Below are positions 1-51,747 of a stretch of DNA of 64,000 nucleotides, in pieces; the stretch's first letter is position 1; each line of letters begins with the position of its first letter. The stretch lies in assembly GCF_003918875.1 (NCBI RefSeq), contig NW_025766103.1, forward strand, positions 930,001-994,000, given 5' to 3'. A program made the position numbers and the translations under genes. Below the pieces are notes generated by a model, which made no database searches, had not been told where the DNA came from, and saw only the letters and a list, made by a program, of their open reading frames with translations. The DNA is from Haliotis rubra (Eukaryota).

Positions 1-44
1 CTTAACCCTCTGCAGTTCCACTGTACAATATTATTGGAAGACAT
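1..44 (-). CDS. LINE ORF2 start (AP endonuclease N-terminus), partial
   Basis: ATG at 44-42 gives MSSNNIVQWNCRGL; QWNCRG is the typical first APE motif of I-group elements. ATG overlaps the ORF1 stop (TAATG). Confidence 0.85.
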   Translation of the reverse strand, partial: MSSNNIVQWNCRGL

Positions 45-1307
45 TATCTTTTGGGGGGATTTATTGGGGATCTACCCCGCACTTTTTTGGAGGGCGACAA
101 GCTATGTGCCCTAGAATGGACGTTTTCACATACGTCCATGGCCTCAAGATGTCCATATTTGTTGTATAGCTGAATTCTATTTTCCGACCCTATTGGGGCT
201 CTGCCACTTTGTTTTTTATCAAGCTGCTTCGGGTTATTTTTTTTGCTTTTAACAATTTGCTGAGTATCAGATGACGATTGAGACTGTGAACGTGACTGAG
301 AGGATGACTTATGATCAGAAGATGACTCTGACTGCTTTTCGCACGTACTAGGAAGTGATTCCGTAGTTTGAGATGATACAGCAGGATACAAAAGCTGTGG
401 ATTGTCGCCTTTGACCCAAGTCAAGTTTGTTTCACAGCTTGTGGATGATGTATATACTTTAGGGCTTGATTCAGTTGGTGTTTTGGTTATTGACGCATAA
501 CTTTCTGTAAGTTCAGATCTCTTTACAAGTTTTTTGGCATCAGAAAAACTGATGTTTTGGGTAAATTTGATCTTGTTGATCTGCATATGTTCTTTCCAAA
601 TCGGACATTCTTTTGAGAAAGATGAATGTTCTCCTGAACAGTTGGTGCATTTTTTAAAGGTACTTGTACAATCTTCAGTTGTGTGTGTCTTCTCACCACT
701 GTGAGCACACACAACGGACAATGTGCAAGTATTTACACCATTGCCATACTTCTGGCATTTCAAGCATCTGAGCGGATTAGGAATGTAGGTGTCAACATTG
801 ATATTGCAGTAACCTGCCTGATTTGGGAGCAGTTGGTGACGAAAAGGAAAACAGATAAGTATTGGTCTGAACAGTTTCATTGTTTTTACGGGTTGAAAAG
901 CGTTTTATGTAGAGTACACCTTGATCTTTCATTTCATTCACGATGTCAAGTTCTGACATGTCAGAAAACAATCGATCACGATCTCTGATGATACCTTTGC
1001 TTGTGTTTAATGTCTTGTGAGCAGAGACAGCGACCGGAATGCCAACGAACGATTCAGTGCTCGACAGATTGGCTGATTGCTGCCGTTTCCTGCACTCAAC
1101 CAGTAACGCACCTTATCCTTAACTTCGCCGGCGATACCTTGAATACCCTTGGAAACCGCGAAAGGGTTCAACTTTAATTGTGTTTTGTCGACAGTTTCAA
1201 TCAAAGCATGGCCAAAAGTCAATTGATTTGGACGGCCTAAGGTCATCATCATCAGGATCATTTTCAAGAGGACGTTTTGTTTTTTTGGTGGGGGTTTCAT
1301 AAGCCAT
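44..1307 (-). pseudogene. LINE ORF1 (nucleic-acid-binding, gag-like), frameshifted
   Basis: Pieces in several frames: MAYETPTKKTKRP, LNPFAVSKGIQGIAGEVK, YIPNPLRCLKCQKYGNGVNTC, CAHSGEKTHTTEDC, CTNCSGEHSSFSKEC. Two knuckles have substituted ligands. Ends PPKR-stop. Confidence 0.88.
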
Positions 1308-1831
1308 GGTTATTGTAGAGATTTCATCATCCGAGCTCCCCACCCACCACGGAGTATCACAAGGACAATGCACAAAACAAGTGGATCTCCGACTCACAGC
1401 ACCAAGGATACCCGGATGATATACTCCAGCAGAAAAATTAAAAGATTAATCCACCAGATTAGCCCATGAGCCACCGCTTGCTGGGCATACGACTCTAGGC
1501 AAAAACATACATGAAATTGTGTAGTTGAAATTCTGAGTTCCAAAAAATCGCCAAGACTTTAAACATATCATTGTATGATTCTCAAAATTTGGTGCAATAA
1601 TACATAGACGTAGCACAGGGCTTGGCGTGACCAGCCGATGGATAGAACCGGGCCAGTTCTACCACCCGCCTAGGTAAAGTAAGGGGCGAAGTGATGTGTT
1701 GGGCAGAGGAACACTGTTCCCGGAACCAGTGCCCTCAACCACCAGACACCCGTCCTCCACCGACACAAGGGCGCAACCCACGGCGAACGGGTTGGTGGAC
1801 TAAATATACCCCCGGGTCCACAACGGGGGGT

Positions 1832-1890
1832 TGAAGAGCACTTAGCGTTACCCAGCACCCACCACGAGGAGGTCGCTCTTCACGGGTGCC
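1832..1890 (-). ncRNA. Minimal HDV-like self-cleaving ribozyme (predicted)
   Basis: GGCACCC(P1) G UGAAGAGCG(P2) ACC(P3) UCCUCGU(L3) GGU(P3') GGGUGCU(P1', G1.U wobble) GG(P1.1) GUAACG CUAAG(J4/2, catalytic C) UGCUCUUCA(P2'). All stems pair fully. Confidence 0.88.
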
Positions 1891-2289
1891 AGTGATGTTA
1901 ATTACACTGAGCAGGGTGCCAATTGCTTTGTAACTGTATTTTGATTAACCTCGTATTTAATTATTTGTGTCAAATGTCAGTTTTAGGGAATATATTGCAT
2001 TTGTTGCTACAAGCGTGATATGCTGGTACTTTATGCCCCATCGGTGTGTATAACCTTGTGGCGTTATATATCTAATCAGATCCAACAATATGATGAGCAA
2101 CGTCAGAGTCTGATACCTGGTGATTCTTTTTCCATTTTCACCTGCCCAGTGACCTAGGAGACTACAGAAAAGGCTTTTTGTGCAGTTGTGTTCAAATGCA
2201 ACGCCCATGCATTGCCTGTATTATATCAAATACATGAAAATGACCACCACTTTCATGTGTGCTATGTTCTTGTATTTGTGGCTGGGAGG

Positions 2290-4334: not shown

Positions 4335-4595
4335 ATTGGTTGGTTGGTTGGTTGGTTGGTTGGTTGGCTGGTTGTCTACCGCAGCAGTATTACAGCAATG
4401 TGGCAGTGGTCTGTAAATAATCGAGGCTGGACCAGACAATCCAGTGATCAACAGCATGATCATCGGTCTACTTAATTGGGATGTGATGTCATGTATGAAC
4501 TAAGTGAGCGAGTCTGACCACCCGATCCCGTTACTCGCCTCTTACGACAAGCATGGTTTGATGAAGACCAATTCTAACCCGGTTCTTCATGGGTC
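4335..4595 (-). mobile_element. SINE with non-tRNA head (RUDI/V-SINE-like), (AACC)n tail
   Basis: Head GACCCATGAAGAACCGGGTTAGAATTGGTCTTCA; body matches SINEs at 12686, 38436 and 56644; TSD TGAAATTATGG at 4324-4334 and 4596-4606. Family name is from recall. Confidence 0.8.
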
Positions 4596-7249
4596 TGAAA
4601 TTATGGCATTAACTGCTAAAAAGAACGTCTGAAACAATCGTTCATTCTATGTTCTTATGTGACTTAGACAGACATATTTTCGCATGGAGGTTACGACCTG
4701 CTGAAGACAATGCCGAAAAATGGAACTGCAATTAGACATTAACAGCAAAAGTCGTTAACCTATATAGAGCAAGTCGTATGTTGACACATCACTCTGTCTC
4801 ACGCTAATGTGTTGTTACATTTCCATGTAAGACCTTTCTCACATCTTATCTGTGTTAAATCGAAAACAATGTCTAGAGTGCATGATTTGTACATGGAACC
4901 TAGTGTACGTTGATCGAAGTACCTATCAATATGTGAATGCTGGAAATTTCCCGTTGTATTGTCTTACAGATAATAACACATATGTTGCGAGGACGTCCCT
5001 TGAAGTGGTGGTTTTTGCTTGGAATCACACGAGAGTTAATTCTGGGATGTTATGACATGGTGTCATCATAAATGTGTGATCAATATAAATCTTAAGTAAA
5101 CAGGTGCGTGCTGTCACTACAAAACGAGTACTAATATAGTTGCCGAACAAGCATTGTGTTGTCATGACAACTGAATCAGTAGGTTGTGATTAAAGATGCT
5201 TGGTGTAGTCTTTTGCTATATTGGGGTTGGGCGATGACCTACAGTTGGTTATACAGATCATAGACGTGTGGTATAGTGTGAACGTGTACCACACCAATGG
5301 CAATAATCGATGTGAAGCTTACTAGCAGCTAACAGACATATTTTGTGCTTTTTCCTTTCCACTATAAAGATTTAGAGATGTGCGTCAATTTTATATAACC
5401 TGATGTATGTTTTGAACGCGTATATGGGATAAAACGATAACGACGTAAGGATCTACATCGAAACGTCGCTCTAGGCAATAAAAAAAAAAGTTGTCATTCA
5501 TAAAATTTATTGGACATCCATAACATTTCTCTCTCAAGCGTTTGACCTTCCAAATGTGAACTGAAGGGTAAATCGTTTGGCCAGACGTTTCACAGGTTTC
5601 ATGATGTGCATGGTGTTGTTATGACACCTGCGTCACAGTACCGAAGGACACTTCATACATCTTCATCAAGGAACGGCGTCAATGGCGTTATCTGTGTCTG
5701 CAACATCAGTCACAATGTCAAATCTGTTATGGTACCGATCTGAGAGGAAAGGCAATGTCCATTGCGATTGGAACGAGTACACACACTTATCAACAGCATA
5801 TTTTGCCATCACAGCGTAACGCTGAAATCATTGTTGTCTGTTCTCTCTTGGGACGAGATCGGGGCCTGTATGGGCTATATGGATATTTCAAGTTACGGAA
5901 TTTGGTAACGTCTTTATAACGTTATCAGTGGTATGTTGGTGAAAGTAATGTATTGAAACTGAGGACACTTGCATGAGATCAGTGATCCATGGACTCGTGA
6001 ACGTAATGTAGTGAAACTAAGGACACATGTATGAGATCAGTGTGCTAACTTAATAATGACAATTACAAAGATTCTGACCAAATTCATTGCCAGTTTTTTT
6101 TCTTAACAGCCTTAAGAATAAGCTTCTATTTGCGTGAGCAATGTGTTGCACGGAAATATATAAATCTGTTCAGCTTGACACTAAAATATCTCTCCTCTAC
6201 TGAGTCCTATCAAAGGAGACCCACAAACAATCATCTTGAGAATCATGCCATGTTGTGAATATTTTCTGATAAAATCAGCGAAACGATTGCGCTCGTTATA
6301 TTGATCTGATTAAGGTAACACTACAGAATTGCCATGTGAAAAGCTGGTCTGCTATTCCCGAAATGTTCGTAGCCCTAAGAATTCTTAACTTCGTAGCCAA
6401 TGTATTAAGAATGGGCTTAAGAAGTTCGCGATGTCTTCATTAGGTGTTTTATCTCATTGTAGGAAGCTGGAAGATCTCGGGACATAACGAATAAACGCAA
6501 CCGAAATTGAACTTTTATATCGGACACACAGACATCATCCAGCACTGGAATGCATCCAATAACAGAGGTACGTGTCCTTTTGCGCGTCCTTATTCTGAAG
6601 CAGCGAGACCTTTTTTCCATTTCCATGATGCCTACGCCAGCCAGGGTACTCTGTTTTAACCTCGTTTGGTCTACCGTGGATCTAACCACTAAGATATCTA
6701 ACCACCGACCTTCTGCACTGGGAGAAAACGCTCTATGTATTACGCCACTGATGAAACAATATTGGCAATTAGTAGGTCTCAATTCGGTATTAATGCATTA
6801 TTCTTACATGATTTGTTTTGTATGTTGGAAGTAAATAATGAACAAAATACATTATGGAACAGTTAGTTGCATGCGTAAGACCTCTTTTACCTTGCAAAGC
6901 GGTTATGAGGTCGTGACGCGCCTATACAGCTTTCGAGACTTTCAATGTAAAAAATTAAAATGCATTTCATAGGTCTCGGTTAAGCAATTTTACATAAGTT
7001 GGAGATCACGTCTGCCTTTTTCCGAAAAAATATAATGTGTCATGGAGGAACATTACCGACACATGATTTTGAGGTTTTGGAAATCGCATCAGACATAAGC
7101 TTCCTGAAGCGTTCGGCAACATATCCTATGACACTGTCTGCGACCAACACGACCCTTTCAGTAACCTTTTACAGCGTTGTGTATTGCAGGTGACGGATGT
7201 GAAGGGAGACGTCTTTGAAGAACATCCAGTAGACGTCCCCATCATTGGT

Positions 7250-12296: not shown

Positions 12297-12798
12297 TTAA
12301 TTAAAGCAGCATCGTGGATGACCTAACGAACATGTATTTTGGTTAGGTGATAGTTTTGACCTCCTAGCACTGGCGCCGAGTTATCACTTTGTAGTTGTGT
12401 TCCCAATAAATACATAGTTTTAGCGAGGTTGATGGACATCAACGGCATATGAAAATATTTATGGGGAAGAGTTAAATGGTGATGAAAGTTTGCTTAACTG
12501 GAACTAATGATTTCTATAAATAAGTATTTGGCTACTGTCAACATATATCATGAATGAAAGACAAAAAGAAATCTGGTTGACTCAGACTGAAAACCCATTA
12601 TGAATTATCGACTATTGGACAAGGGACATCACAAAACACAACACAATGGTGCTGTTATGTGCTGTGCTCTTGTTCTATGTGGACTAGATCCAAGTTAGAA
12701 TTGATCTTCAGTAACCCATGCTTGTCGTAAGAGGCGACTAACAAGATCGGGTGGTCTAGCTCGCTGACTTGGTTGACACATGTCATAGTATCCCAGTT

Positions 12799-12857
12799 GG
12801 CACCCGTGAAGAGCCACCTCCTCGTGGTGGGTGCTGGGTAACGCTAAGCGCTCTACA
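12799..12857 (+). ncRNA. HDV-like ribozyme, second copy (two mismatches in P2)
   Basis: P1, P3, L3, P1.1 and J4/2 are identical to the 1832-1890 copy; P2 = UGAAGAGCC/CGCUCUACA. Confidence 0.78.
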
Positions 12858-13349
12858 ACCCCCCGTTGTGGACCCGGGGGTATGTTTGGACCACCAACCC
12901 GTTTCCCGTGGGTTGCGCCCCTGTGTCGGTGGAGGACGGGAGTCTGGTGGTTGAGGGCACTGGGAGCCTGGAACCGTGTTCCTTTTGCCCATCACACCAC
13001 TTCGCCCCTTACTTCACCTAGACGGGTGGTTGAATGGGCCCGATTCAATCAATTGGCTGGTCACGCCACGCCCTGTGCATAGTGAATATTATTATTGCAC
13101 ATTTTTACTATTTGGTCTTGGTTATTTGAAATTTCACTACACAAATTAACAATATATTTCATTGAGTCCTATGCCAGAATGCGGTGGCTCATGGGCCAAT
13201 CTGGTTGTTCCTCTGGATTAACTGCAGTATACCACTCCTGTAACCCTTTTGTGTAAGTATGCTGGAACACCGCTTACGTATGACATCACCCTTGTTGGGG
13301 CTCCATGGCGGGCAGGGAACAGGTTTGCTGAACCAATATACATTTCAAC

Positions 13350-13568
13350 ATGGGTAAACACAATCCCAAAAACACAAAACGTCAACTTTCAGAATCTGAT
13401 TCTGAACTTGATTCTGATGAAGATGAAATTGTTTCCAAATTAATATTTATTCCGAAAGGGATACTTGGCCACGCTTTCTTGTTCTGGAAGCAAAAGGTGA
13501 GTGCACCCTTACTTTCTATTCACCATTTCTGTTGGAAAAGGGACTACAAGGTAAAGCCGGTGAATTGA
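13350..13568 (+). pseudogene. ORF1 N-terminal remnant of a related LINE subfamily
   Basis: MGKHNPKNTKRQLSESDSELDSDEDE, then frameshifted WPRFLVLE and GKGLQGKAGELK, paralleling WPCF-LIE and SKGIQGIAGEVK of ORF1 at 1307. Confidence 0.75.
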
Positions 13569-14154
13569 AAGACTAGTTTTACATTTATATAGCTGTGATA
13601 CTCTAGTATATTTACTGTCCTTCGATGACAGGTTTTTACGTTATACATTTATTGATTTGAATATTGATATAAACTGTCATGATATGGCTGCAATATTGCC
13701 GATGTGACGTTAAATTTTAACTCACTCACTAGTATCCCAGTTGCGTCAATGGATGCTCATTAGCCAAGCGGATAAGTGATCAAATTGTGCACTTGGTGTG
13801 ACAAGCATGAAATTTGGCATTATTGTAGCTTACACCCTTCTTATTAAATAAAGATCGAGTGGCCTCGCAGATATTTTTTAATGTTCATATTTTGTGGGGG
13901 AAAAGTGAAAAAAATATTTTTTTCCACTATTTTCGTCATAACTTTTTGAAAAGTCCTCCAATTCTCATAAATCATATATCAAACTGTAGGACCTTCATAG
14001 CTGGTAGTTTTTCATCTATACATGTCTTTCTGTCTTTGACGGTTAGGTCTACGGAATTCAGTTATATCATAACTGCCCGAAAATGGGAAATTTGATGGAC
14101 ATTTTTCAAAATGGCCACCATATAGACTACATCAGTGAAATACGCATTTGGTCT

Positions 14155-27800: not shown

Positions 27801-29035
27801 TTCCTACTACGAAAGCACTGCTGTCTCACTGTTTCATTCACCAAATATATCGTATTCGTGCGAGTCAGTGAAAACACTTGGTTACGCCTGAGGTTTGGCT
27901 GCAACATGACAGACAGAAATCATTACAACTCACTCATACTATATAGCATAACAATACATACTGAACAATAAATCATGAATGTGCGTTAAGATTAAAGTAA
28001 CTGCTGCCGATAGCTCTATCGGCTGTTAAACTCTTCACCACCTCTACCATTCACTTCGCTGTTACACTGTGAAGTCTGACCCACATGGGGTTATCGCAAA
28101 TTAAGACACAAGCACAAATTATTGCACCTTTTAATTTGCCTGCAGTCAGAGCTGCTATTTACGAGTCTCTGGCTGCCAAGTCGCTCGGCAAGATGCCTCC
28201 CTGCAGTCAACTTCCGACACCAATTTGCGCACAACATGAAGCCAATTTCTCATTTGTCTGGTTCTCCGACCCCTTAATATGGTCACTGTCACAACAGACC
28301 GTCTTTGATCAGCTGAGTGGGTAGTGGGATTTATGCAACGTGCTAAAGTACAAGTGAAGTCACACAGTTATTAGCCCATATCCTGTCTGTGGTAGTTGCA
28401 GCGATACAAGCATTCAAAGTACCTACTCCTGATGTTCTAAGAAGGTTACCTACCAGATCACCAATGTGCATATTGGTGATTAACTTCTCCCCGAAACAAT
28501 ATCTAAGGTTTCAAGAACAATACATAACGAAACAAACTTGCAGTGAGTTAGATTCTTGAGCGGATGTCTGAATGGTAGCATTTAGAAGAATAAGCAAAAT
28601 GTGTTACAATTGACCAAAGCTCTACGATGCTACGATGCGACAATGTGACTTTGGTGTTAAGATAGTTAGGGCCTGACTCACTCCGGAGATTAATCCATAC
28701 TGGCTTTCTGTTAATACGGGAATTTTTATTATTCACAATGAAATGTAACGTATTATTATAATTCATGTCTGTTTAAGTAAATATAGTATATAATAATGCA
28801 TTTGTGACAATAAAACAATACTAAAAATATATAATCATTCATAAAGTCATTGTGATTACTTTTGTATTTCGAAGCGTCAAATTGAGCATGAAAAGTGTTT
28901 ATGTTCTTCTCTCCCGTACAGGAAACTGGTATTCCCCATTGATAGTCATTGATGATACCAGTTCTCTTCCACATCCTCGACGTGAGCATTGAACACGACA
29001 CAATTAGACCATGCCCGATGCCTCTTTCATGCTGT

Positions 29036-29152
29036 GGGTTCGAATCCCCACATGGGCACAATGTGTGAAGCCAATTTCTGGTGTCCCACGCCCTGATGTT
29101 GCTGGAATATTGCTAAAAAGCGGCGTAAAACCAAACTCAGTCAGTCAGTCAG
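29036..29152 (+). mobile_element. 5'-truncated tRNA SINE (same family as 2584); duplicate at about 49215-49332
   Basis: GGTTCGAATCCCACATGGG..GCTGGAATATTGCTAAAA..(CAGT)n; degenerate TSD TTCAYGCTGT. Confidence 0.85.
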
Positions 29153-29189
29153 TCCTTCACGCTGTTTTAATGAGAGTCACATCTTGTAA

Positions 29190-29877
29190 GTGAGTAAGTG
29201 AGTGAGTTAAAATTTAACGTCACATCGGCAATATTACAGCCATATCGTGGCGAGAACGTTTGACATTGAAATGAAATATGTGTATATTATAAAAAACCTA
29301 CCGACGAAGGACAGTAAAACAACTAGAATATCACAATTAGAATTAAAACTAGCGTGGAAAGTTTAAAACTAATAGCACTATTGGGACAATACAATATAAA
29401 AACAGGCTAGAGATCGCCAACAACAGAAGGTAGATCACCATACTAGGGACCATGGGGACTTACAGTACCTTTGCTACCTGCATGGTCCCTAGGTGGATTT
29501 ACACCATCCCTTCAGCCGTTGGCGATTATAAGAAATGTTAGCCAAAATTAAAATAACAAGAATACTACGTTTAAAAATCCTGGTAAGTTTAAATTGACCT
29601 TCAAAGTTTTGGGACTTACGTACCCTCTCAGGGGGACAATAATTTTACGATACTTCAACCCCCCTTGAGGGTACAGCCACTAACAATCTCAGTTACTAAT
29701 CAAAACTACCAATCATTAAAACACATCTATCTACAGAACATATTTATCAAAATTCATTAATTAAATCAATTTCTTTTAAAAAAAGCAAGAATTAAATGAA
29801 GATGAACAGTATTAAAAAGATCCTTAACAGTTTTAACATTGAAATATTTATCCCTTAGGATGGAGAATTCAACACAG
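29190..29877 (-). mobile_element. 5'-truncated I-group LINE (ORF2 tail + 3'UTR); duplicate at 49390-50076
   Basis: Minus frame CVEFSILRDKYFNVKTVKDLFNTV matches the ORF end in 47141-47422; (CTCA)n tail; degenerate TSD TCACAWCTTGTAA. Confidence 0.88.
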
Positions 29878-30145
29878 TTCACAACTTGTAAACATTCCCT
29901 AAACAATTATCTCATTAAGTTGCTAGCACTGTTTTCGGATATTCATCTAATGACGACAGTAATTTGGTTTGCTTAATGTCTTATATGTTTGTTTAGCCAG
30001 TCAAAATACACGTAAATCTGGTTGTGTTTATTTTACCAGTAACGATGTGGCGTACTCAATCAAGGATAAAGGGAAGGAGAGAGTGGTTTTGAAGTCGTTA
30101 AGACACTATTATTGTGTCACATTTGTCCATTAAAGTCTTTCATGT

Positions 30146-32158
30146 TTTCTAATCGAAAATGATTTTCTGATTGACTCAACAGATCTACTTATGCCTCTGT
30201 TTTTAGAACATTTCAACCTTGTACTATCATCGGGTATTCTACCGGAGTCGTGGGTTACTGGCGTTGTTAAGCCAATCTATAAAGGTAAAGGGTGTAAACT
30301 GGATCCCAACTCATACAGACCTATAACAATTTTAAGTTGCCTTGGTAAACTTTTTTACAAGAGTGTTAAATAACAGACTGAATACATTTTTAGATACTAA
30401 CAATATACTTAACCCAACACAGGCAGGCTTCAGACAAGGGTTTTCAACATGTGATAACATGTTTGTTATGCAAATGATGATCCAAATACTAAAACTCTCT
30501 AAAAAGAAACTATATACGGTATTTGTAGATTTCACTAAAGCATTTGATAAAGTCTGGAGAATTGGGTTGTGGCATAAACTAACAAAAAACTGGGATAGAT
30601 GGGAGATTTTTCACACTCATAAGAAATATGTATCACAACATAAAATCTAGGGTAATGATTGGAAATACCATATCAGATGAATTCCCGTGTTACGAGGGTG
30701 TGCGACAAGGTGAAAACCTGTCGCCTCTTTTGTTCTCGATATACCTAAATGATCTTGAACAACACCTCCTTGATAGTAGTTGTACTGGTTTTAAATATGA
30801 AACGCAAACTAACAGCATCGACCTCTTATACCATTTTATTATATTGTTATATGCAGATGACGCTGTACTGTTCAGCGAAAATCCAAATGATTTACAAAAA
30901 TCCCTGAATGTCTTCTTTCATTACTGTAAGAAATGGAAACTTAAAGTAAACTTATCTAAAACGAAAGTTGTTATCTTTGGAAGCGGCCCCAAGAAATCTT
31001 CGAAACTCCACTTTACCTACGGAACTGAAACTATAAATATTGTAGATACATACGATTACCTTGGAATTAAATTCCATAGAAATGGGCGATTTGTCCAAGC
31101 AATTAAATCACTTACGGAAAGCGCCACCAAAGCAATGTATTGTCTTTTAAAGAAATCCAGGAATGTTAATTTACCTTTAGATTGCCTTTTCGATGCATTT
31201 GATGTTATGGTCGTTCCAATTCTATTGTATGGCTCAGAAATATGGGGACACGAGAACTTAGAAATAATAGAAAGAATTCACTTAAAATTTCTGAAATTAG
31301 CTTCCGGTTTGAGAAATAGCACCCCAAGTTATATGCTTTACGGTGAATTTGGAAGAGAGCCTTTGAGTATTAAAATCTTTAAGCGATTTATTTCACATTG
31401 GCATAAATTAGCCTCTGAGAACACATATTGGAAGCCATCCCAGATTATATATAACTGTGTTAACCACATCTGTGACAATACAAATAAAGTTCCATGGCTA
31501 CGTTTTGTGAAATATATCCTTGATAACTGCGGTCTATCCTACGTGTTTCTAAATCCGTCTGTATGTTCTACGCCCTGGCTTGTCTCAATGGTCGAAAACA
31601 CCTATAGAGCCCAGTTTTTCCAAAATTGGAAGTCAAATGTTGATTCTAGTTCCAAGGGGATTATTATAAATATTTCAAAACTCAACCAATCTTAGAAAAA
31701 TATCTTCTTCTTCCCAAAAATATATACTACCCAATTTTGAAGTTTAGAACATCTAACCATAAATTACCAATTGAGACAGGCCGATGGTTGGGCATTCCAC
31801 GTGAAGACAGACAATGTCCACTTTGTGAATCAAACGCTGTTGGAGACGAGTTTCACTACTTGTTTAGATGTGAAGCTTTTCTCCAATTCCGACGTCAGTC
31901 TCTGAACACTAAATACCTAGAATTTCCAAATTTGTCCATCTTTAAGAAACTCTTGTCTACTACCAGCATAAGCGACCTTAAAGGCCTTTCTAAATTACTG
32001 AACAATGTATTTAATGCATTTAAAAAATGAAATATTGTAATTATCTTATATCTTTCTATCGTGTAAGCTGCTGTCTTGTATATGATATAAATGTATATAC
32101 GTTTATCTCATGTACCGCCGTGGGCGGTTTATAGAGAATAAAGAGTTTGAGTTTGAGT
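30146..32158 (+). mobile_element. 5'-truncated RT-encoding LINE of a different family (CR1/L2- or RTE-X-like; clade not resolved)
   Basis: Absent from the homologous site at 50340-50350; AATAAA followed by (GAGTTT)n tail; no TSD. Confidence 0.92.
30191..32030 (+). pseudogene. Reverse transcriptase ORF with C-terminal CCHC finger, three frameshifts
   Basis: YRPITILS, QAGFR, FVDFTKAFDKV, GVRQGENLSPLLF, LLYADD, YLGI, CPLC..DEFHYLFRC. Confidence 0.93.
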
Positions 32159-33224
32159 TTGACTGTAAATGGAACAGTCAGTGATATAACGAATGCTTAA
32201 TCAAAAGGCGTTACTTATACTAGTTCGAAACGTAAGACCAAATATTTATTGAAATATAGGACCCGATGTTTAATTGAAAAATAACACCATGATTAGCAAA
32301 AATTATGATGCATTAGAACGAAATACCTTCACAAAAACGTGCAAAATGTTCTCTGACCTGTCAACCATTTCGAAAAGGGACGAGATAAGTCAAAAGGAGA
32401 CCATGTTTTGGACTGGCAAATCGTAGAATCCAAGTGCGTTCCTGTGTTGGTGCTGCTGATTTTTCTGAACTTGCAGATGATTGCGTTTACTCTGACAACG
32501 TCACTCAGGCGTGATGAGATTCCCCTTCTCCTGATGATGGATAGAAGCTTTATGAAGGGCTGTATATACAACAAAGTGGAAGATTTCCTCGCCGTTGTCT
32601 TGAATGCGTCATGTGAATAACTGATGATCTTTACCCGCTGGACCAAGTGATGCTGGACTGTTGGTGCGCGATTGCAGGACAGTAGTCTATCTGGCACGAT
32701 CCAGATACATCTTCCCCTTTTGTTTTGTTAGTACCGCTGGGATTAAACATTTGTCTTTGAAATGGAACATATATTTTGCAGTGGCTCATGTAGTATCATT
32801 TTCGAGGCTTGGAAGATGTTTTTGTAAGTTTGCCAGATTCACGATTGTGTGTGCGTAGCTCAAATTCATCCTGGGGTGTCGGCGCCCTAACGTGTACGAC
32901 TTGTATGACCTTGGTGTTTCCTTCTGTACTAAGTCGATACATCATCATATCATTGAAATACAATTAACCATTAGACTTAATCATTTACCAATTCAAGTTT
33001 ATCTCCATCATGTGTTATTGCAGTAATGGCCATTATTTTCGATGAGATCCAGAGAACTCATGCTAAAGCCTCCATCTAGCTCTGCATTTACACCCCCATG
33101 GATATAGGTCAAGATTGTGATCATGACAACACGTATGCTAATAGACAGTGTAATCAATAGTACCTCTGTTAGGGACAAAGTTTAGGACGCTTCAAACTTC
33201 GTGTTAAGACAAAAGTGTTCCTCG

Positions 33225-33560
33225 CAACAATTGAAACACCTGTGTTTAGGGCATCGCTCTGACAACCCGTCCACCATACAACAATTGAAACACCTGTGTT
33301 TAGGACATCGCTCTGACAACACGTGCACCATGCAACAATTGAAACATCTGTGTTTAGGACATCGCTCTGACAACACGTCCACCATGCAACAATTGAAACA
33401 CCTGTGTTTAGGGCATCCCTCTGACAACACGTCCACCATGCAACAATTGAAACAACTGTGTTTAGGGCATCCCTCTGACAACACGTCCACCATGCAACAA
33501 TTGAAACACCTGTGTTTAGGGCATCCCTCTGACAACACGTCTACCATGTAACAATTGAAC
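33225..33560. repeat. 54-bp minisatellite, six units plus a partial
   Basis: Unit CAACAATTGAAACACCTGTGTTTAGGGCATCCCTCTGACAACACGTCCACCATG. Confidence 0.97.
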
Positions 33561-34286
33561 TTGTGTTAACGATCCAGACAGCGAAAAGCAGCTAACAGAC
33601 ATATTTTGTGCGTTTTCCTTTTCACTATAAAGAATTACAGATGTGCGGCAATTTTATATAACCTGATGTATGTTTCGAATGCGTATATGGGACATAACGA
33701 TAACGATGTAAGGATCTACATCGAAACGTTGCTCTATGAAATAAATAAGAAGTTTTCATCCATAAAGGTGAATGTTTCATTTCTGTGTCACCAACTTCTA
33801 GAATGCCGATCAAACAATGCGTATGTGGGACATCCATAACATTTCTCGCTCAAGCGTTTGACCTTCCAAATGTGAACTGAAGGGTAATTCTTTTGGCCAG
33901 ACGTTTCATAGATTTCATGATGTGCATAGTGTTGTTATGACACCGGCGTCACAGTGCCAGAGGACACTTCATTCATCTTTATCAGGGAACGGCGTCAATG
34001 GCGTTATCTGTGTCTGCAACATCAGTCACAATGTCAAATCTGTCATGGTACCGATCTGAGAGGAAAGGCAATGAGTACACACGCTTATCAACAGCAGATT
34101 TTGCCATCACAACTAATGCTGAAATCATTTTTGTCTGTTTTCTCTTGGGACGAGATCGGGTCCTGTATAGGCTATATGGATATTTCAAGTCACGGAATTT
34201 GATAACGTCTTTTTAACGTCCTCAGCGATATGTTGGTGAACGTAATGTAGTGAAACTGAGGACACATGCATGAGATCAGTGTGCTA

Positions 34287-34356
34287 TGTAGCAACCCACT
34301 ATTTGATAACAACGCACTATGTAATAAAATCTTCAAAGTCCAAAACAGTTGCTACA
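34287..34356. mobile_element. 70-bp TIR-bounded insertion (units 2 and 3 only)
   Basis: TGTAGCAAC..GTTGCTACA flanked by GTGCTA on both sides; unit 1 has the empty site near 6041. Confidence 0.55.
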
Positions 34357-34490
34357 GTGCTAACTTAATAATGACAATTATATAGTGACATCAGGTTAAC
34401 TGCCCCCGGACAACTGCCCCCTGGCTATCTGCCCCTTCATTGTGCCCCACGGACAACTGACCCTTAGGCTAATTGCCCCTAGGACAAGTG

Positions 34491-34618
34491 NNNNNNNNNN
34501 NNNNNNNNNNNNNNNNNNNNNNNNNNNNNNNNNNNNNNNNNNNNNNNNNNNNNNNNNNNNNNNNNNNNNNNNNNNNNNNNNNNNNNNNNNNNNNNNNNNN
34601 NNNNNNNNNNNNNNNNNN
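34491..34618. other. Assembly gap
   Basis: Run of N. Confidence 1.
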
Positions 34619-35099
34619 AAACTCATTATATCAACAAACAGTGCCTTTAGGGACTCGTTATATTGATCTAATTACGAAAAAACACTACAGATTTGCCAAG
34701 TGAAAAGCTGAAGTTTATATCAGTGCACACAGCGTAGTACTGTACAAATTATTCTTACTAATTCCAGTAGTTCTGTTCTGTTTTTGCGATGGCTTCATTA
34801 GGTCTTTTATGTCCTTGTAGGAAGCTGGAAGATGTGGGTATATAACGAATGAACGCATCCGAGATTGAACTATAATATCGGACATATAGACTTCATGCAG
34901 TACTGAAATACATCCACGAATAGAGGTACGTGCAGTTCTGCGTGTCCTTATTTTGAAGCAGCGAGACCTTTTTTTCATTTCCATTCATCTTCCGTGGATC
35001 TAACCTCTAAGGTACCTAACCACTGATGCCACAATACTGGCAATTGGTAGGTCTGAAGTTGGTATAAATGCATTATTCTTACATGATTTGTTTTTGTAT

Positions 35100-35373
35100 A
35101 AGTACTGTAAGTCCCCATGGTCCCTAGTTTGGTGATCTACCTTCAGTTGTTGGCGATCTTTAGCCAGTTTTTATATTGTATTGTCCAAATAGTGCTATTA
35201 GTTTTAGTTTTCCACACTAGGTTTAGTTGAAATTGTGATATTCTAGTTGTTTTACTGTCCTTCGTCGACAGGTTTTAATAGGATACATCTATTCCATTTC
35301 GGTGTCACATGTGTTCTCGTCACGATATGGCTGAAATATTGCCGATGTGACGTTAAATAATAACTCACTCACT
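35100..35373 (+). mobile_element. I-group LINE 3'UTR fragment; duplicate at 53223-53496
   Basis: TSD CATGATTTGTTTTGTAT; empty site in unit 1 near 6807. Confidence 0.9.
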
Positions 35374-38300
35374 CATGATTTGTTTTGTATGTTGAAAGTA
35401 AATAATGAACAAAATACATTTATGTAACACTTACGTTGTATGCATGCATAAGACATTTTTACCTTGCAAACCGGTTACAGCTCTCGAGGCTTTCAAAGTA
35501 AAAAATTAAGGTGCATTTCATAGGTCTTGGTTAAGCAATATTACCTTGGAGAGTTGAAGATCACGTCTGCCTTTTTCCGAAAATATATAATGTGTCATGG
35601 AGGAGATTTTCAGGTTTTGGAAATCTCATCAGACATAAGCTTCCTGAAGCGTTCGGCAACATAGCCTATGACACTGTCTGCGACCAACATGACCCTTTCA
35701 GTAGCCTTTTACGGCGTTTTGTATTGCAGGTGACATATTGATAACGGAAGTGATGGGAGACGGCTTTGAAGAACATCAAGTAGAAGACCCCATCATTGGT
35801 ATTAAGTAACTGTGCAGAAATTAACACTACAAAGCACCCACTTGCTAGGTGTCTCCATTAATGCAAGCAAATTGAGGCAATTATATCATTCGTCCGTCCC
35901 CAGACAGCATAGAGTTCTTTTGTGATGTATACAAGGGAAATCGAATCTGTCAGACATTATGAGGTCCAATTTCAGGGTTGGACATACTGTCCTACTGTGT
36001 CTGCCCGTCTCCTTGTGTGCGCCCATGTGGCTTCTTAGTGTCCATGGGGCGGATAGTGAAAGGAGCTTTATATTGCCGTGCTGCAGAAAAGTTCTTGGTA
36101 TGATAGTCATTAACAAAGTAGTTGTGAGGAAATTAATATACTCATTTTCTGATGAGACTTTGTCGTCCAAGAATGCTGTGATAATTTACAGTGATTTGTG
36201 TTGCATGCTGTCTGTTTAATTGTGGTCACTTCGGATTGTCTGGCTTCACATCGTTGTACCCTACTGTTTGTATATGTCAAATTTTACATCAGCTTGACTA
36301 ATATACCTGCAATATCAAGTCGGGGGAATCACAAGCTGGCCTGCGCTGCATGATGTCTGTTTAACCGTGGTCACCTACCTACCTACCCACAGAAACACCA
36401 ACCTACATAACTACCTACCTACCTACCCAAACACCTACCTACCTACCTACCCAAACACCTACCTACCTACCTATCCACAGACACACCAACGTACCTACCT
36501 ACCTACCCAAACACCTACCTACCTACCTTTCCAAACACCTTAATCAATAAGTTGCGCTAAGTACCAATACAGCTACGAATGCCACATACAAATCTATCTC
36601 TGTGAATCTCTCTCAATGAAACAATTTTGTTTGACCTTTGGTATGATTCTTGATTTGAGACCCAGACCTATCTGTTTTTAGTGATTGACATGAGGCAACG
36701 TGTTTCATTGCCTTCTTTCAGGTCAGTAAGTAATCGTCGTGTAAATGTATTCACAGTCGTCGTCAGACTTTATGACCAAATTACATGAACTGTTTGAAGA
36801 CACATATTCTGTAAAGAATTAACGATTCATAGGTTTATCTACGTGTGAGCTGTATGTGTTCATGTTGCCCACGAAAACACATCAAACTGCCATATAGAAT
36901 ATATTTAAAGTACTTTGTGATGTACCTTTTTAACGCACACAAATAAACACTGAAATGGAGCTATCATCACTGAGAATGAAGGTGCAAGGGACTCTTGGCA
37001 CTGAGATAAATTAATGTTAAAGGCTTTTCATGCTTTAAAGTATGTACATTACATCTTGATTGATATAGCTGGAATATTGCCGAGTGCGGCGTTAAACAAT
37101 AACCAAACATATTGACTCTTCTGGAAATACGACTAATACTATTACGACTTCGCTGAAATACAGGTGATAGGCATTTGCCTGTTTCGTTTTAAATTGGTTC
37201 AATGATTAGTCGCTTCTCAACGGTTATTCTCCTGTAAACAGCTCCTTACAGATGTAAAGGAGATGAAAAATAACATAAATCGATTGCAATTTCAATGTGA
37301 GTCGGCAGAAAACTTACATTAACTTGAATTGTACCCTCTTTAAACAATTCGTACATAAGTCCCAATGCATTCCCAGCAAATTTAAACCTACTACTATTTT
37401 GTCTATCGTAGTATATGTGTTATTTTAATCTATGGCTAGACTTTATCTAAATTGCTAACTTGCTGAAGGGATGGTGTAAATCCAGTAGGGTCCGTGCAGG
37501 TAGCAAGAGTACTGTAAGTCCCCACGGTCCCTGGCAGATGATCTAACTTCAGTTGTTGGCAATACATAGCCTGTTTCATATATTGTGTTTGTCCTTTATG
37601 GTAAACGAATTTTAGTGTTATATACTATTTTCTGATTGAAATGTGTGATATACTAGTTGTTTTACTGTCCTGCTGACAGGTTTTGACATATACCTTTGTT
37701 CATTGTAAAAGCATCAAAATCGTTGTTTCACATATGAATTCTCCGTGTCTCGTAAAATCTTACTCAGTGACGTCTTTACAATATATATGCAATGTCGTTA
37801 TACTGTAATAATATATATATCTCCCTGATTCCGTTGGCGTTGGCATAATATGTACATTAACGTGAACAAAATTCTCTTTGGTGAGATAACACAAGAGAAA
37901 TGTAGAAACATTACATTATAAGCTATTCATTCATTTATGCCTTTGTTGTAGCGCAGCTGGGTTGAAATGTGAATTCTAGGTTTGTGGCTCGGTGAGGTAC
38001 AACATCTTCTGTGGCAAGCTGTATGATGTATATACGTATTGCTTTGTTAATGAAAGTTCCCGTACGTCTTTTCATAAGCTTTATACCGAAACCATTATAT
38101 GAACGTATGAGCAGGCACTCATTCAGATGAATTTGAACGTGTATCCAATTCACCTTAAGGACACAATACCTCTACCGAGGACTTACAACAGACATAATAG
38201 TATTACTTAAACCATCATCTTGGATGACCGAACGAACATGTATTTTGGTTAGGTGATAGTTTTCATCTCCTAGCACTGACGCCGAGTTATTACATTGTAG

Positions 38301-47091: not shown

Positions 47092-47962
47092 AGGTATTAA
47101 TAAATTACATGAAATAAAACCCTATATTGGCTACACTTACTTGGGTTGTCAGTCCAGATTTGAAGAGGTCATCATACGACGATGTCGTATTGGCCACACA
47201 AGATATACTCATGAATACCTATTGAAAGGTGAGGATCCTCCATTTTGTATCCCTTGTGATGAAAGAATCACGGTCAAGCATGTCTTGCTTGACTGTGTTG
47301 AGTATTCCATCACAAGGGATAAATATTTTAAATCACGAATTATGAAGGACCTTTTGAATAGTATCAGTTCTCATTTAATTATTGCATTTTTAAAAGAATT
47401 AGATTTGTTAAATTATTTGTAAATACATAAATATTTTAAGATAGGAAGTTTGAATTAGTAACTAAGATTGTTAGTGGCTGTATCCTCGAGGGGGGTTAAA
47501 GTACTGTAAAATTATTGCCCTCCTGAGAGGGTATGTAAGTCCCAAAACATTCGAAGTAAATTAAAACGTTCCACTTTTTTAATCGTAGAATACCTGTTCT
47601 TTTAATGCATGGCTAGATTTGCTAAATTGCTAACGGCTGAAGGGATGGTGTAAATCCAGTTAGGTTCCATGCAGGAAGCAAATGTACTGTAAGTCCCCAT
47701 GGACCCTAGTATGGTGATCTACTTTCAGTTGTTGGCAATCTATAGCCTGTTTTTATATTGTATTGTCATTTAAAAGTAACATATTTAAGATTTAATTACT
47801 AGTTTTACATACATATCTGTGATATTCTAGTTGTTTTACTGTCCTTCGTCGGCAGGTTTTTTATAATATGCATATATTTCATTTCAATATCGAATGTTCT
47901 CGTCACGATATGGCTAAAATATTGCCGATGTGACGTTTAATATTAACTCACTCACTCACTCA
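47092..47962 (+). mobile_element. 5'-truncated I-group LINE with ORF2 C-terminal zinc finger and full 3'UTR
   Basis: NKLHEIKP..RCRIGHTRYTH..CIPC..TVKHVLLDC; TSD CTCAACATGTCATGT at 47077-47091 and 47963-47977; empty site at 27778. Confidence 0.93.
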
Positions 47963-50900
47963 CTCAACATGTCATGTGCCTTGGATTCCTACTACGAAAG
48001 CACTGCTGTCTCACTATTCCATTCACCAAATATATCGTATTCGTGCGAGTCAGTGAAAACACTTGGTTACGCCTGAGGTTTGGCTGCAACATGACAGACA
48101 GAAATCATTACAACTCACTCACACTATATAGCATAACAATACATACTGAACAAGAAATCATGAATGTGCGTTAAGATTAAAGTAACTGCTGCCGATAGCT
48201 CTATCGGCTGTTAAACTCTTCACCACCTCTACCATTCACTATGCTGTTACACTGTGAAGTCTGACCCATATGGGGTTATCGCACATTAAGACACAAATTA
48301 TTGCACCTTTTAATTTGCCTGCAGTCAAAGCGGCTATTTACGAGTCTCTGGCTGCCAAGTCGCTCGGCAAGATGCCTCCCTGCAGTCAACTTCCGACACC
48401 AATTTGCGCACAATATGAAGCCAATTTCTCATTTGCCTGGTTCACCGACCCCTTAATATGGTCACTGTCATAACTGATCGTCTTTGATCAGCTGAGTGGG
48501 TAGTGGGATTTATGCAACGTGCTAAAGTACAAGTGAAGTCACACAGTTTTTAGCCCATATCCTGTCTGTGGTAGTTGCAGCGATACAAGCATTCAAAGTA
48601 CCTACTCCTGATGTTCTAAGAAGGTGACCTACCAGATCACCAATGTGCATATTGGTGATTAACTTCTCCCCGAAACAATATCTAAGGTTTCAAGAACAAT
48701 ACATAACGAAACAAACTTGCAGTGAGTTAGATTCTTGAGCGGATGTCTGAATGGTAGCATTTAGAAGAATAAGCAAAATGTGTTACAATTGACCAAAGCT
48801 CTACGATGCTACGATGCGACAATGTGACTTTGGTGTTAAGATAGTTAGGGCCTGACTCACTCCGGAGATTAATCCATACTGGCTTTCTGTTAATACGGGA
48901 ATTTTTATTATTCACAATGAAATGTAACGTATTATTATAATTCATGTCTGTTTAAGTAAATATAGTATATAATAATGCATTTGTGACAATAAAACAATAC
49001 TAAAAATATATAATCATTCATAAAGTCATTGTGATTACTTTTGTATTTCGAAGCGTCAAATTGAGCATGAAAAGTGTTTATGTTCTTCTCTCCCGTACAG
49101 GAAACTGGTATTCCCCATTGATAGTCATTGATGATACCAGTTCTCTTCCACATCCTCGACGTGAGCATTGAACACGACACAATTAGACCATGCCCGATGC
49201 CTCTTTCATGCTGTGGGTTCGAATCCCCACATGGGCACAATGTGTGAAGCCCATTTCTGGTGTCCCCCGCCCTGATGTTGCTGGAATATTGCTAAAAAGC
49301 GGCGTAAAACCAAACTCAGTCAGTCAGTCAGTCCTTCACGCTGTTTTAATGAGAGTCACATCTTGTATATAACTTTATTCATCTTGTAAGTGAGTAAGTG
49401 AGTGAGTTAAAATTTAACGTCACATCGGCAATATTACAGCCATATCGTGGCGAGAACGTTTGACATTGAAATGAAATATGTGTATATTATAAAAAACCTA
49501 CCGACGAAGGACAGTAAAACAACTAGAATATCACAATAAGAATTAAAACTAGCGTGGAAAGTTTAAAACTAATAGCACTATTGGGACAATACAATATAAA
49601 AACAGGCTAGAGATCGCCAACAACAGAAGGTAGATCACCATACTAGGGACCATGGGGACTTACAGTACCTTTGCTACCTGCATGGTCCCTAGGTGGATTT
49701 ACACCATCCCTTCAGCCGTTGGCGATTATAAGAAATGTTAGCCAAAATTAAAATAACAAGAATACTACGTTTAAAAATCCTGGTAAGTTTAAATTGACCT
49801 TCAAAGTTTTGGGACTTACGTACCCTCTCAGGGGGACAATAATTTTACGATACTTCAACCCCCCTTGAGGGTACAGCCACTAACAATCTCAGTTTCTAAT
49901 CAAAACTACCAATCATTAAAACACATCTATCTACAGAACATATTTATCAAAATTCATTAATTAAATCAATTTCTTTTAAAAAAGCAAGAATTAAATGAAG
50001 ATGAACAGTATTAAAAAGATCCTTAACAGTTTTAACATTGAAATATTTATCCCTTAGGATGGAGAATTCAACACAGTTCACAACTTGTAAACATTCCCTA
50101 AACAATTATCTCATTAAGTTGCTAGCACTGTTTTCGGATATTCATCTAATGACGACAGTAATTTAGTTTGCTGAATGTCTTATATGTTTGTTTAGCCAGT
50201 CAAAATACACGTAAATCCGGTTGTGTTTATTTTACCAGTAACGATGTGGCGTACTCAATCAAGGATAAAGGGAAGGAGAGAGTGGTTTTGAAGTCGTTAA
50301 GACACTATTATTGTGTCACATTTGTCCATTAAAGTCTTTCATGTGTTGACTGTAAATGGAACAGTCAGTGATATAACCAATGCTTAATCAAAAGGCGTTA
50401 CTTATACTAGTTCGAAACGTAAGACCAAATATTTATTGAAATATAGGACCCGATGTTTAATTGAAAAATAACACCATGATTAGCAAAAATTATGATGCAT
50501 TAGAACGAAATACCTTCACAAAAACGTGCAAAATGTTCTCTGACCTGTCAACCATTTCGAAAAGGGACGAGATAAGTCAAAAGGAGACCATGTTTTGGAC
50601 TGGCAAATCGTAAAATCCAAGTGCGTTCCTGTGTTGGTGCTGCTGATTTTTCTGAACTTCCAGATGATTGCGTTTACTCTGACAACGTCACTCAGGCGTG
50701 ATGAGATTCCCCTTCTCCTGATGATGGATAGAAGCTTTATGAAGGGCTGTATATACAACAAAGTGGAAGATTTCCTCGCCGTTGTCTTGAATGCGTCATG
50801 TGAATAACTGATGATCTTTACCCGCTGGACCAAGTGATGCTGGACTGTTGGTGCGCGATTGCAGGACAGTAGTCTATCTGGCACGATCCAGATACATGTT

Positions 50901-51411: not shown

Positions 51412-51747
51412 CAACAATTGAAACACCTGTGTTTAGGGCATCGCTCTGACAACCCGTCCACCATACAACAATTGAAACACCTGTGTTTAGGACATCGCTC
51501 TGCCAACACGTGCACCATGCAACAATTGAAACATCTGTGTTTAGGACATCGCTCTGACAACACGTCCACCATGCAACAATTGAAACACCTGTGTTTAGGG
51601 CATCCCTCTGACAACACGTCCACCATGCAACAATTGAAACACCTGTGTTTAGGGCATCCCTCTGACAACACGTCCACCATGCAACAATTGAAACACCTGT
51701 GTTTAGGGCATCCCTCTGACAACACGTCTACCATGTAACAATTGAAC
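51412..51747. repeat. 54-bp minisatellite, duplicate array
   Basis: Same unit and copy number as 33225-33560. Confidence 0.97.

What the first reader, a model, noticed from the sequence alone, without database searches (positions are those of the whole stretch)
1832..1890. Minimal P4-less HDV-like ribozyme capping an I-group (Nimb/I-like) LINE
Seen: the first 59 nt of the LINE (minus strand) fold into a complete nested double pseudoknot. It has a 7-bp P1 with G1.U wobble, 9-bp P2, P3 ACC/GGU, L3 UCCUCGU, CC/GG P1.1, a GUAAC segment like the HDV GCAAC junction, and J4/2 GCUAAG, with no P4 helix. Established: HDV-like ribozymes process the 5' ends of R2, RTE and L1Tc/Ingi-type elements, and P4 is dispensable. 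Inference: this LINE frees its RNA from host read-through transcripts by self-cleavage. I do not recall a minimal ribozyme described for a molluscan I/Nimb LINE, but I cannot search the literature.
Basis: partly seen in the sequence, partly recalled or inferred. Interest (0 to 1): 0.92.

Follow-up and report, generated by a model that had tools for sequence, protein, structure and literature searches.

The report
P4-less HDV-like ribozyme heading abalone LINE
The first 59 bases of a jumping gene (a LINE) in this abalone-like genome fold into a small self-cutting RNA of the hepatitis-delta type that sets the element's exact first base; the feature is real and well supported, but a ribozyme of this kind was already reported in abalone in 2011.

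Summary
Window 1890->1832 (minus strand) has every core feature of an HDV-like ribozyme and no P4 helix: P1 of 7 bp with G1.U37, P2 of 8 bp, P3 ACC/GGU, L3 UCCUCGU, P1.1 CC/GG, and GC-N-AA with the catalytic C at 1845.

A second copy lies at 12799-12857(+). Seven more were found in four Haliotis genomes. Seven P4-containing relatives were found in Gigantopelta aegis and in one ENA assembly.

- **Element start.** In seven insertions flanked by target-site duplications, the duplication abuts nucleotide 1 of P1 exactly.
- **Covariation.** Across 13 distinct sequences, 97% of pair cells are paired, against 34-53% when partners are slid. Compensatory changes occur in 5 of 7 P1 pairs, 5 of 8 P2 pairs and 1 of 2 P1.1 pairs. 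The catalytic positions never vary.
- **Host element.** It is a ~6.1-kb LINE with a gag-like CCHC ORF1, an ORF2 of endonuclease, RT and RNase H, and a (CACT)n tail. The Nimb label was not tested.

The most likely function is co-transcriptional self-cleavage that frees the LINE RNA from read-through transcripts. No cleavage or RNA-end data could be obtained.

Novelty is low. PMC3774820 cites Webb & Luptak 2011 for a P4-less HDV-like ribozyme in Haliotis discus, and LINE 5' HDV-like ribozymes are established. The scan noted this motif in about 20 other windows of this genome.

One new lead: the 'LINE-promoter' head of mollusc LP-SINEs is probably this ribozyme.

The parts
1832..1890 (-). HDV-like ribozyme, copy A (59 nt, no P4); predicted cleavage just 5' of G at 1890
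1884..1890 (-). P1 5' strand GGCACCC (nt 1-7)
   Evidence: pairs with 1854-1860; compensatory changes in 5 of 7 pairs across families
1875..1882 (-). P2 5' strand UGAAGAGC (nt 9-16)
   Evidence: pairs with 1832-1839; compensatory changes
1861..1873 (-). P3 ACC, L3 UCCUCGU, P3' GGU (nt 18-30)
   Evidence: P3 and most of L3 (5 of its 7 positions, nt 21, 22, 25-27) are invariant in all 13 distinct sequences; L3 nt 23 and 24 vary; matches the HDV and F. prausnitzii consensus
1854..1860 (-). P1 3' strand GGGUGCU (nt 31-37)
1852..1853 (-). P1.1 GG (nt 38-39), pairs with CC of L3 (1868-1869)
   Evidence: CC/GG here, CA/UG in the P4-containing relatives
1840..1851 (-). single strand GUAACGCUAAGU replacing P4; putative catalytic C at 1845, A-A at 1842-1843
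   Evidence: C46, A48 and A49 are invariant; nt 47, 50 and 51 vary; 1840 A>G (U51C) is the common letter in genomic contigs
1832..1839 (-). P2 3' strand GCUCUUCA (nt 52-59)
1308..1831 (-). LINE 5' UTR of copy A
   Evidence: 77-80% identical to the 5' UTRs of H. rubra and H. asinina LINEs and of copy B, starting at nt 1
1..1307 (-). gag-like ORF1 of copy A, split over several frames; the element runs off the window edge
   Evidence: ORF pieces 1197-1397, 1007-1300, 792-971 and 44-880 with CCHC knuckles; homologs are Haliotis ORF1 proteins
12799..12857 (+). HDV-like ribozyme, copy B (G17C, U51C, U57A; one P2 pair broken)
12799..13729 (+). 931-bp internally deleted LINE: ribozyme, 5' UTR, start of ORF1, then the last ~159 nt of the LINE ending in (CACT)n
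12786..12798 (+). 5' target-site duplication TAGTATCCCAGTT, abutting G1
13730..13742 (+). 3' target-site duplication TAGTATCCCAGTT

Best explanation
The 59 nt form a minimal, P4-less HDV-like self-cleaving ribozyme. It is the first module of a ~6.1-kb non-LTR retrotransposon with a gag-like CCHC ORF1, an ORF2 of APE, RT and RNase H, and a (CACT)n tail.

Proposed mechanism:
1. The element is transcribed as part of a longer host or read-through transcript.
2. The nested double pseudoknot folds, and the cytosine at 1845 catalyses scission just 5' of G1 (1890). This leaves LINE RNA with a 5'-OH G and discards the upstream RNA.
3. Target-primed reverse transcription to the end of that RNA places G1 directly against the target-site duplication. 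Every full-length daughter therefore carries the ribozyme again.

Shown here: the fold, its conservation, its covariation, and the element boundary at nt 1.

Inferred: the cleavage itself, and any role of the folded 5' end in cap-independent translation of ORF1, which starts ~583 nt downstream. Copy A is itself a decayed LINE, but its ribozyme is intact.
For: - **HDV consensus.** Full-length alignment to RF02682 and RF00094 with only P4 missing. A P4-containing relative aligns to RF02682 through P4 as well.
- **Other copies.** Nine P4-less copies in the window and in H. asinina, H. rufescens, H. rubra and H. cracherodii. Seven P4-containing copies in Gigantopelta aegis and ENA ERZ25071447. Each lies 440-700 nt upstream of ORF1 or at the head of a deleted derivative.
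- **Boundary.** Similarity between copies begins at nt 1. TSDs abut nt 1 in winB, L001, L006, L007, L008, L010 and L014.
- **Genomic contigs.** In four runs from three organisms, depth falls more than 1000-fold just beyond 1890, and 90-161 contigs per run continue there into unrelated flanks.
- **Pairing.** 253 of 260 pair cells are paired, against 34-53% when partners are slid. There are 2-3 pair types in 6 of 7 P1 pairs (five of them changed on both sides), 6 of 8 P2 pairs and 1 of 2 P1.1 pairs. P3, C46, A48 and A49 are invariant. Within Haliotis alone, covariation exceeds all 500 shuffles.
- **Variable positions.** They are the ones expected to be free: nt 17, 47, 50 and 51.
- **Literature.** HDV-like ribozymes process the 5' ends of R2, RTE, baggins and L1Tc (PMC6765202). 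P4 is dispensable (PMC3774820; PMC10879173).
Against: - There is no direct evidence of cleavage. All public runs found are stored as assembled contigs, so RNA 5' ends could not be mapped.
- Rfam scores are below gathering (29.2 vs 44; 21.2 vs 50).
- The nested MFE fold is no more stable than shuffles (z = -0.29). That program cannot score pseudoknots.
- A transcription start at nt 1 would give the same DNA boundary.
- The P4-containing relatives begin with C1-G37 instead of the G.U wobble typical of the family.
- Copy A's ORF1 is broken, so this copy is not an active element.
Confidence: 0.85

Rival explanations
1. The head is only an internal promoter or initiator that makes RNA polymerase start at nt 1, as proposed for the ~70-bp LINE-derived head of mollusc 'LP-SINEs'. 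On this reading the HDV-like fold is not catalytic.
For: PMC4758252 interprets a conserved 5' head of about 68-70 bp, shared by Nimb LINEs and Haliotis SINEs, as a promoter. An exact start at nt 1 is what a fixed transcription start would also give. L1Tc Pr77 shows that one 77-nt head can be both promoter and ribozyme (PMC3383444, listed).
Against: A DNA promoter does not explain compensatory changes that keep three RNA helices paired while their sequences are replaced. It also does not explain the invariance of exactly the HDV catalytic positions. The promoter function is untested in the cited paper. A dual role is not excluded.
Confidence: 0.07
2. The pseudoknot is a conserved structural 5' cap substitute that does not cleave. 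It might protect against exonucleases, bind the element's proteins or recruit ribosomes. The 5' end would be made by other means.
For: HDV-like folds at LINE 5' ends are reported to promote translation initiation (PMC6765202). The relatives with C1-G37 lack the cleavage-site wobble. P4 loss and a 12-nt single strand might weaken the catalytic fold.
Against: C46 and the following A-A are invariant; these matter for catalysis rather than for fold stability alone. The RNA end lies exactly at the scissile position in two diverged families. P4-less HDV-like ribozymes are active in other systems (PMC10879173; PMC3774820).
Confidence: 0.06
3. A chance resemblance to the HDV fold in a GC-rich repeat end.
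For: A structure-only descriptor finds 0.63 hits per shuffled window. Rfam scores are below gathering.
Against: With the core letters required, 0 hits in 53 shuffles. The motif is conserved with covariation in at least six genomes, always at nt 1 of the element.
Confidence: 0.01

Closest known systems
P4-less HDV-like ribozyme of Haliotis discus (Webb & Luptak 2011, RNA Biol 8:719, as cited in PMC3774820)
   Same: An abalone HDV-like ribozyme with a few nucleotides in place of P4. It is very probably the same family, which is present in hundreds to thousands of copies in Haliotis genomes.
   Different: The original paper is not in the library, so its sequence and its stated genomic context could not be compared. 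The TSD evidence, the covariation table and the P4-containing sister forms reported here may go beyond it.
HDV-like ribozymes at the 5' ends of R2, RTE, baggins and L1Tc/ingi retrotransposons (Eickbush 2010; Ruminski 2011; Sanchez-Luque 2011; summarised in PMC6765202)
   Same: The same fold, the same position at nt 1 of a non-LTR element, and the same proposed role of release from co-transcripts. The internally deleted derivative that keeps the ribozyme (winB) parallels the R2 SIDE elements (PMC3414825).
   Different: The host element has two ORFs and an RNase H domain and inserts at varied sites. The ribozyme has no P4 and a 1-nt J1/2.
Minimal drz and theta ribozymes of gut phages (Riccitelli 2014; PMC10879173)
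   Same: P4 replaced by a short strand; the same core.
   Different: Those lie in Caudoviricetes genomes, often next to tRNA genes, and process tRNA 3' ends. Here the host is an animal LINE.
Bombyx and other silkmoth R2 ribozymes without P4 (PMC3774820)
   Same: A retrotransposon HDV-like ribozyme that lacks P4.
   Different: They have a J1/2 loop of several hundred nt, and P1 is formed with 28S rRNA sequence.
'LP-SINE' heads and the first ~68 bp of Nimb-17_LMi, I-3_DR and RTE-9_CPB (PMC4758252)
   Same: A head of about 70 nt, conserved only at the extreme 5' end and shared between LINE families and SINEs of Haliotis, Littorina and oysters. L009:2764-~3075 has exactly that architecture, and its head is the 73-nt ribozyme.
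   Different: The paper reads the head as a promoter. Its sequences are in figures that are not held, so identity with this ribozyme is inferred, not shown.

Membership tests
HDV-like (delta) self-cleaving ribozymes | Nested double pseudoknot: P1 and P2 crossing, P3 nested inside, and P1.1 between L3 and the strand after P1 | tested here: met
   All four helices are present with the canonical order and lengths (7, 8, 3 and 2 bp)
HDV-like (delta) self-cleaving ribozymes | Helices supported by compensatory changes | tested here: met
   97% of cells paired vs 34-53% when slid; double changes in P1, P2 and P1.1; score above 500 of 500 shuffles within Haliotis
HDV-like (delta) self-cleaving ribozymes | G1.U37 wobble at the cleavage site | tested here: met
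   G.U in all 8 distinct Haliotis-type sequences. The P4-containing relatives have C1-G37 instead.
HDV-like (delta) self-cleaving ribozymes | Catalytic C in J4/2 followed by N-A-A; L3 with conserved U, C and G | tested here: met
   C46, A48, A49 and L3 U21, C22, C25, G26 and U27 are invariant in 13 distinct sequences
HDV-like (delta) self-cleaving ribozymes | P4 helix | tested here: not met
   C44 is followed directly by G45, which leaves no room for a hairpin. P4 is not required for activity (PMC3774820, PMC10879173). A 7-bp P4 is present in the Gigantopelta and ENA relatives.
HDV-like (delta) self-cleaving ribozymes | Rfam gathering score for RF00094 or RF02682 | tested here: not met
   29.2 vs 44 and 21.2 vs 50 bits; no hit at gathering threshold. 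These models cannot score P2 or P1.1, and they penalise the missing P4.
HDV-like (delta) self-cleaving ribozymes | Mg2+-dependent self-scission abolished by a C-to-U change | not testable with these tools
   Needs a bench assay
Ribozyme-terminated non-LTR retrotransposons | Ribozyme cleavage site coincides with the first nucleotide of the element | tested here: met
   TSD abuts nt 1 in 7 insertions; family boundary at 1890 in 90-161 contigs per run
Ribozyme-terminated non-LTR retrotransposons | Element RNA with a 5'-OH at nt 1, derived from longer co-transcripts | not testable with these tools
   Only Logan contigs were available, no raw RNA reads
I-group LINEs (I, Nimb, Ingi, LOA, Tad1) | ORF1 with CCHC knuckles; ORF2 with APE, RT and a C-terminal RNase H | tested here: met
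   Pfam hits on L007 and L012 ORF2 and on L002 and L010-L013. Within the window only ORF1 remnants are present.
Nimb clade | RT-domain phylogeny placing the element with Nimb references | not tested

The most novel reading that the evidence does not exclude
The ~70-nt 'LINE promoter' head is shared by Nimb LINEs of locust and zebrafish, a turtle RTE and the LP-SINEs of Haliotis, Littorina, oysters and scallops (PMC4758252). On this reading it is in fact this HDV-like ribozyme. There would then be a widespread class of SINEs with no Pol III head. They would depend on read-through transcription plus self-cleavage, and the ribozyme would move as a module between LINE clades and SINEs. The C1-G37 variant would also show that the cleavage-site wobble is dispensable in nature.
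Probability: 0.55. Interest if true: 0.55.

Novelty: already known. Interest (0 to 1): 0.3.

Why it matters
The finding shows how a very abundant abalone LINE, and its short derivatives, can spread without carrying a promoter. Each copy cuts itself out of whatever transcript runs through it.

At 59 nt it is among the smallest natural HDV-like ribozymes in an animal. It has a P4-containing sister form, which makes a natural before-and-after pair for studying P4 loss.

Both the principle and an abalone P4-less example are already published, so the value here is limited to two things:
- **Documentation:** the TSD boundaries, the covariation table and the range of species.
- **A testable reinterpretation:** mollusc 'LP-SINE' heads may be ribozymes rather than promoters.

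Tried and rejected
- **Nested MFE folding** is uninformative for a pseudoknot (z = -0.29).
- **Rfam at gathering threshold** finds nothing in the window.
- **A structure-only descriptor** is not specific: 0.63 chance hits per window, and about 40 when relaxed.
- **MAFFT** misaligned P1' between the P4-less and P4-containing forms. Pairs were therefore counted by position in a script.
- **A covariance model built from the Haliotis copies** found no further copy in the window or in L001-L014.
- **RNA 5'-end mapping** was not possible, because every run offered is stored as contigs. On contigs, the step at 1890 shows a repeat boundary, not an RNA end.
- **Wider taxa:** the Araneus locus came without DNA, and the Amphibalanus protein was not on record.
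- **L002,** a full LINE from GCA_029980105.1, shares the 5' UTR only from about nt 62 onward and has no ribozyme.
- **The metagenome pattern scan** returned other genuine HDV-like ribozymes with the same core (16 of 118 hits with a perfect P1). It returned no further member of this LINE family.
- **Papers not held:** Webb & Luptak 2011, Webb 2009 and Ruminski 2011.

Full report
**What is there.** Read on the minus strand, window 1890->1832 is a 59-nt sequence with the following parts:

- P1 strand GGCACCC, then G
- P2 strand UGAAGAGC, then G
- P3 ACC, L3 UCCUCGU, P3' GGU
- P1' GGGUGCU
- P1.1 GG
- the strand GUAACGCUAAGU
- P2' GCUCUUCA

This is the order and spacing of the HDV ribozyme core. 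It includes the G1.U37 wobble, the CC/GG P1.1 and a GC-N-AA segment whose C (window 1845) corresponds to the catalytic C75. C44 is followed directly by G45, so no P4 hairpin can form. The ninth pair (G17.U51) is peculiar to this copy.

**Is it more than chance?**

- Structure alone is not. My structure-only descriptor finds 0.63 hits per dinucleotide-shuffled window, and the nested MFE is ordinary.
- With the HDV core letters required, there were no hits in 53 shuffles.
- Rfam aligns the whole of RF02682 (29.2 bits, E=0.0016 for the 501 nt searched) and the whole of RF00094 (21.2 bits), with only P4 deleted. Both are below their gathering scores.
- The 59-mer recurs at 12799-12857(+) with three mismatches.

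**Relatives.** The ORF downstream of copy A is a frameshifted gag-like ORF1 with CCHC knuckles. Its homologs are hundreds of Haliotis proteins and many others. I fetched loci for six of them and found the following:

- P4-less ribozymes 600-700 nt upstream of ORF1 in H. asinina (L001, two copies), H. rufescens (L006, three), H. rubra (L007) and H. cracherodii (L008).
- A 73-nt form with a 7-bp P4 hairpin in Gigantopelta aegis (L009, two copies) and in five LINE copies of ENA assembly ERZ25071447 (L010-L014).

Full-length elements are 6.1-6.2 kb (Haliotis, (CACT)n tail) or 5.7 kb (ENA, (CATT)n tail). They encode an ORF2 with APE, RT and RNase H. That domain set fits the I group. Nimb membership was not tested.

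**The ribozyme starts the element.**

- Similarity between copies begins at nt 1.
- Target-site duplications of 11-14 bp abut nt 1 in the window's copy B (12786-12798 and 13730-13742), and in L001, L006, L007, L008, L010 and L014. In L006, L007 and L008 the junction is unambiguous to the base.
- Copy B is a 931-bp internally deleted LINE. It keeps the ribozyme, the 5' UTR, the start of ORF1 and the last ~159 nt. Head plus tail are therefore enough for mobilisation in trans.
- I laid Logan contigs of four runs from three organisms on 1300-2100. Depth drops more than 1000-fold just beyond 1890, and 90-161 contigs per run continue into unrelated flanks there.
- The only frequent variant inside the ribozyme is U51C, at an unpaired position.
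- The first ~290 nt are about ten-fold more abundant than the rest of the stretch laid, which suggests many short head-bearing derivatives.

**Covariation.** In 13 distinct sequences, 253 of 260 pair cells are standard pairs, against 34-53% when the 3' partners are slid by 1-3 positions.

- P1 changes from GGCACCC/GGGUGCU to GGCACUC/GAGUGCU within Haliotis, and to CCCCUGC/GCAGGGG in the P4-containing forms.
- P2 has three pair types at five positions.
- P1.1 changes from CC/GG to CA/UG.
- P3, most of L3, C46, A48 and A49 never vary.
- Within Haliotis alone, the covariation score exceeds all 500 shuffles and all slid controls.

This is selection on an RNA fold, and the invariant positions are the catalytic ones.

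**Mechanism.** The best reading is co-transcriptional self-scission 5' of G1. This releases LINE RNA from read-through transcripts, and the element's first base is then fixed by full-length reverse transcription. The same mechanism is established for R2, RTE, baggins and L1Tc (PMC6765202).

- **Shown:** the fold, the covariation and the boundary.
- **Inferred:** the cleavage, and any help the folded end gives to translating the uncapped RNA.
- **Rivals:** a promoter-only head, or a non-cleaving structural 5' element. They cannot be fully excluded without assays, but they do not explain the compensatory changes together with invariant catalytic residues. A dual promoter and ribozyme head, as in L1Tc Pr77, remains possible.

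[quoted passage not shown] It also shows that silkmoth R2 ribozymes lack P4. P4-less minimal ribozymes are otherwise known from gut phages (PMC10879173).

The core claim is therefore already in the literature. I could not read the 2011 review to compare the sequence or the genomic context. The scan's first readers also noted this motif in about 20 other windows of this genome.

**A lead worth following.** PMC4758252 describes a ~68-70-bp head that is conserved only at the extreme 5' end. It is shared by Nimb LINEs, a turtle RTE and the 'LP-SINEs' of Haliotis, Littorina and oysters. The authors read it as a promoter and left its nature open.

L009:2764-~3075 is such an element. It consists of the 73-nt ribozyme, an unrelated ~190-nt body, and the LINE tail with (CATT)n. 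Its similarity to the LINE stops 3-4 nt after P2'. I think the LP head is this ribozyme. The paper's sequences are not held, so this is an inference.

**Unexplained.** The P4-containing forms start with C1 paired to G37 rather than with the G.U wobble, yet TSDs abut that C.

Noticed in passing
L009:2764-3075: A SINE-like element of about 300 nt in Gigantopelta aegis. Its head is the 73-nt P4-containing HDV-like ribozyme and nothing more. An unrelated body follows, then the LINE 3' tail and (CATT)n, and a partial tail repeat comes after that.
   Followed up: partly
L009:9497-9569; L010-L014:5490-5563: The P4-containing relatives begin with C1-G37 (Watson-Crick) instead of G1.U37. TSDs in L010 and L014 still abut that C. 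L013 carries a mutated P1 (CAUCUGC).
   Followed up: partly
window 28700-37800 and 48900-55300: Two stretches repeat each other at an offset of about 18.2 kb (for example 32243/50430, 33118/51305, 33743/51930, 37052/55250). This looks like a segmental duplication inside the window.
   Followed up: no
window 4480-4600 (-) and 12660-12785 (+); L002:255-290: Copies of a SINE with the core GTCGTAAGAGGCGACTAA. Copy B of the LINE is inserted next to one, and a similar core sits inside the 5' UTR of the L002 LINE.
   Followed up: no
L001:2550-15129; L006:5552-9373: In H. asinina, three LINEs lie head to tail in the same orientation, 240-280 bp apart. In H. rufescens, three ribozyme heads (5552, 7214, 9315) follow one another with no LINE tail between them. 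Such arrays would give read-through transcripts for the ribozyme to cut.
   Followed up: no
window 1842-1882 (contigs of run X7): In organism C, at least six contigs carry a variant in which ribozyme nt 1-49 are followed by 5-14 other letters and then by nt 9 onward. This is a partial internal duplication of the ribozyme.
   Followed up: no
window 1911-1920 (-): GGCACCCTGC repeats the P1 5' strand 30 nt upstream of copy A. It may be chance or the remnant of an earlier insertion.
   Followed up: no
window 29197-29352, 35234-35373, 47790-47956, 49397-49552, 53357-53496, 55819-55976: Isolated copies of the ~159-nt LINE 3' tail. They are 5'-truncated LINEs or SINEs that use the same tail.
   Followed up: no
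L021, L031, L043, L056, L061, L063, L072, L090, L120, L121, L123 (metagenome contigs): Unrelated but apparently genuine HDV-like ribozymes with the same ACCUCCNCGUGGU...GG.AAC...GGCUAAG core and a perfect 7-bp P1. Their hosts are unknown.
   Followed up: no
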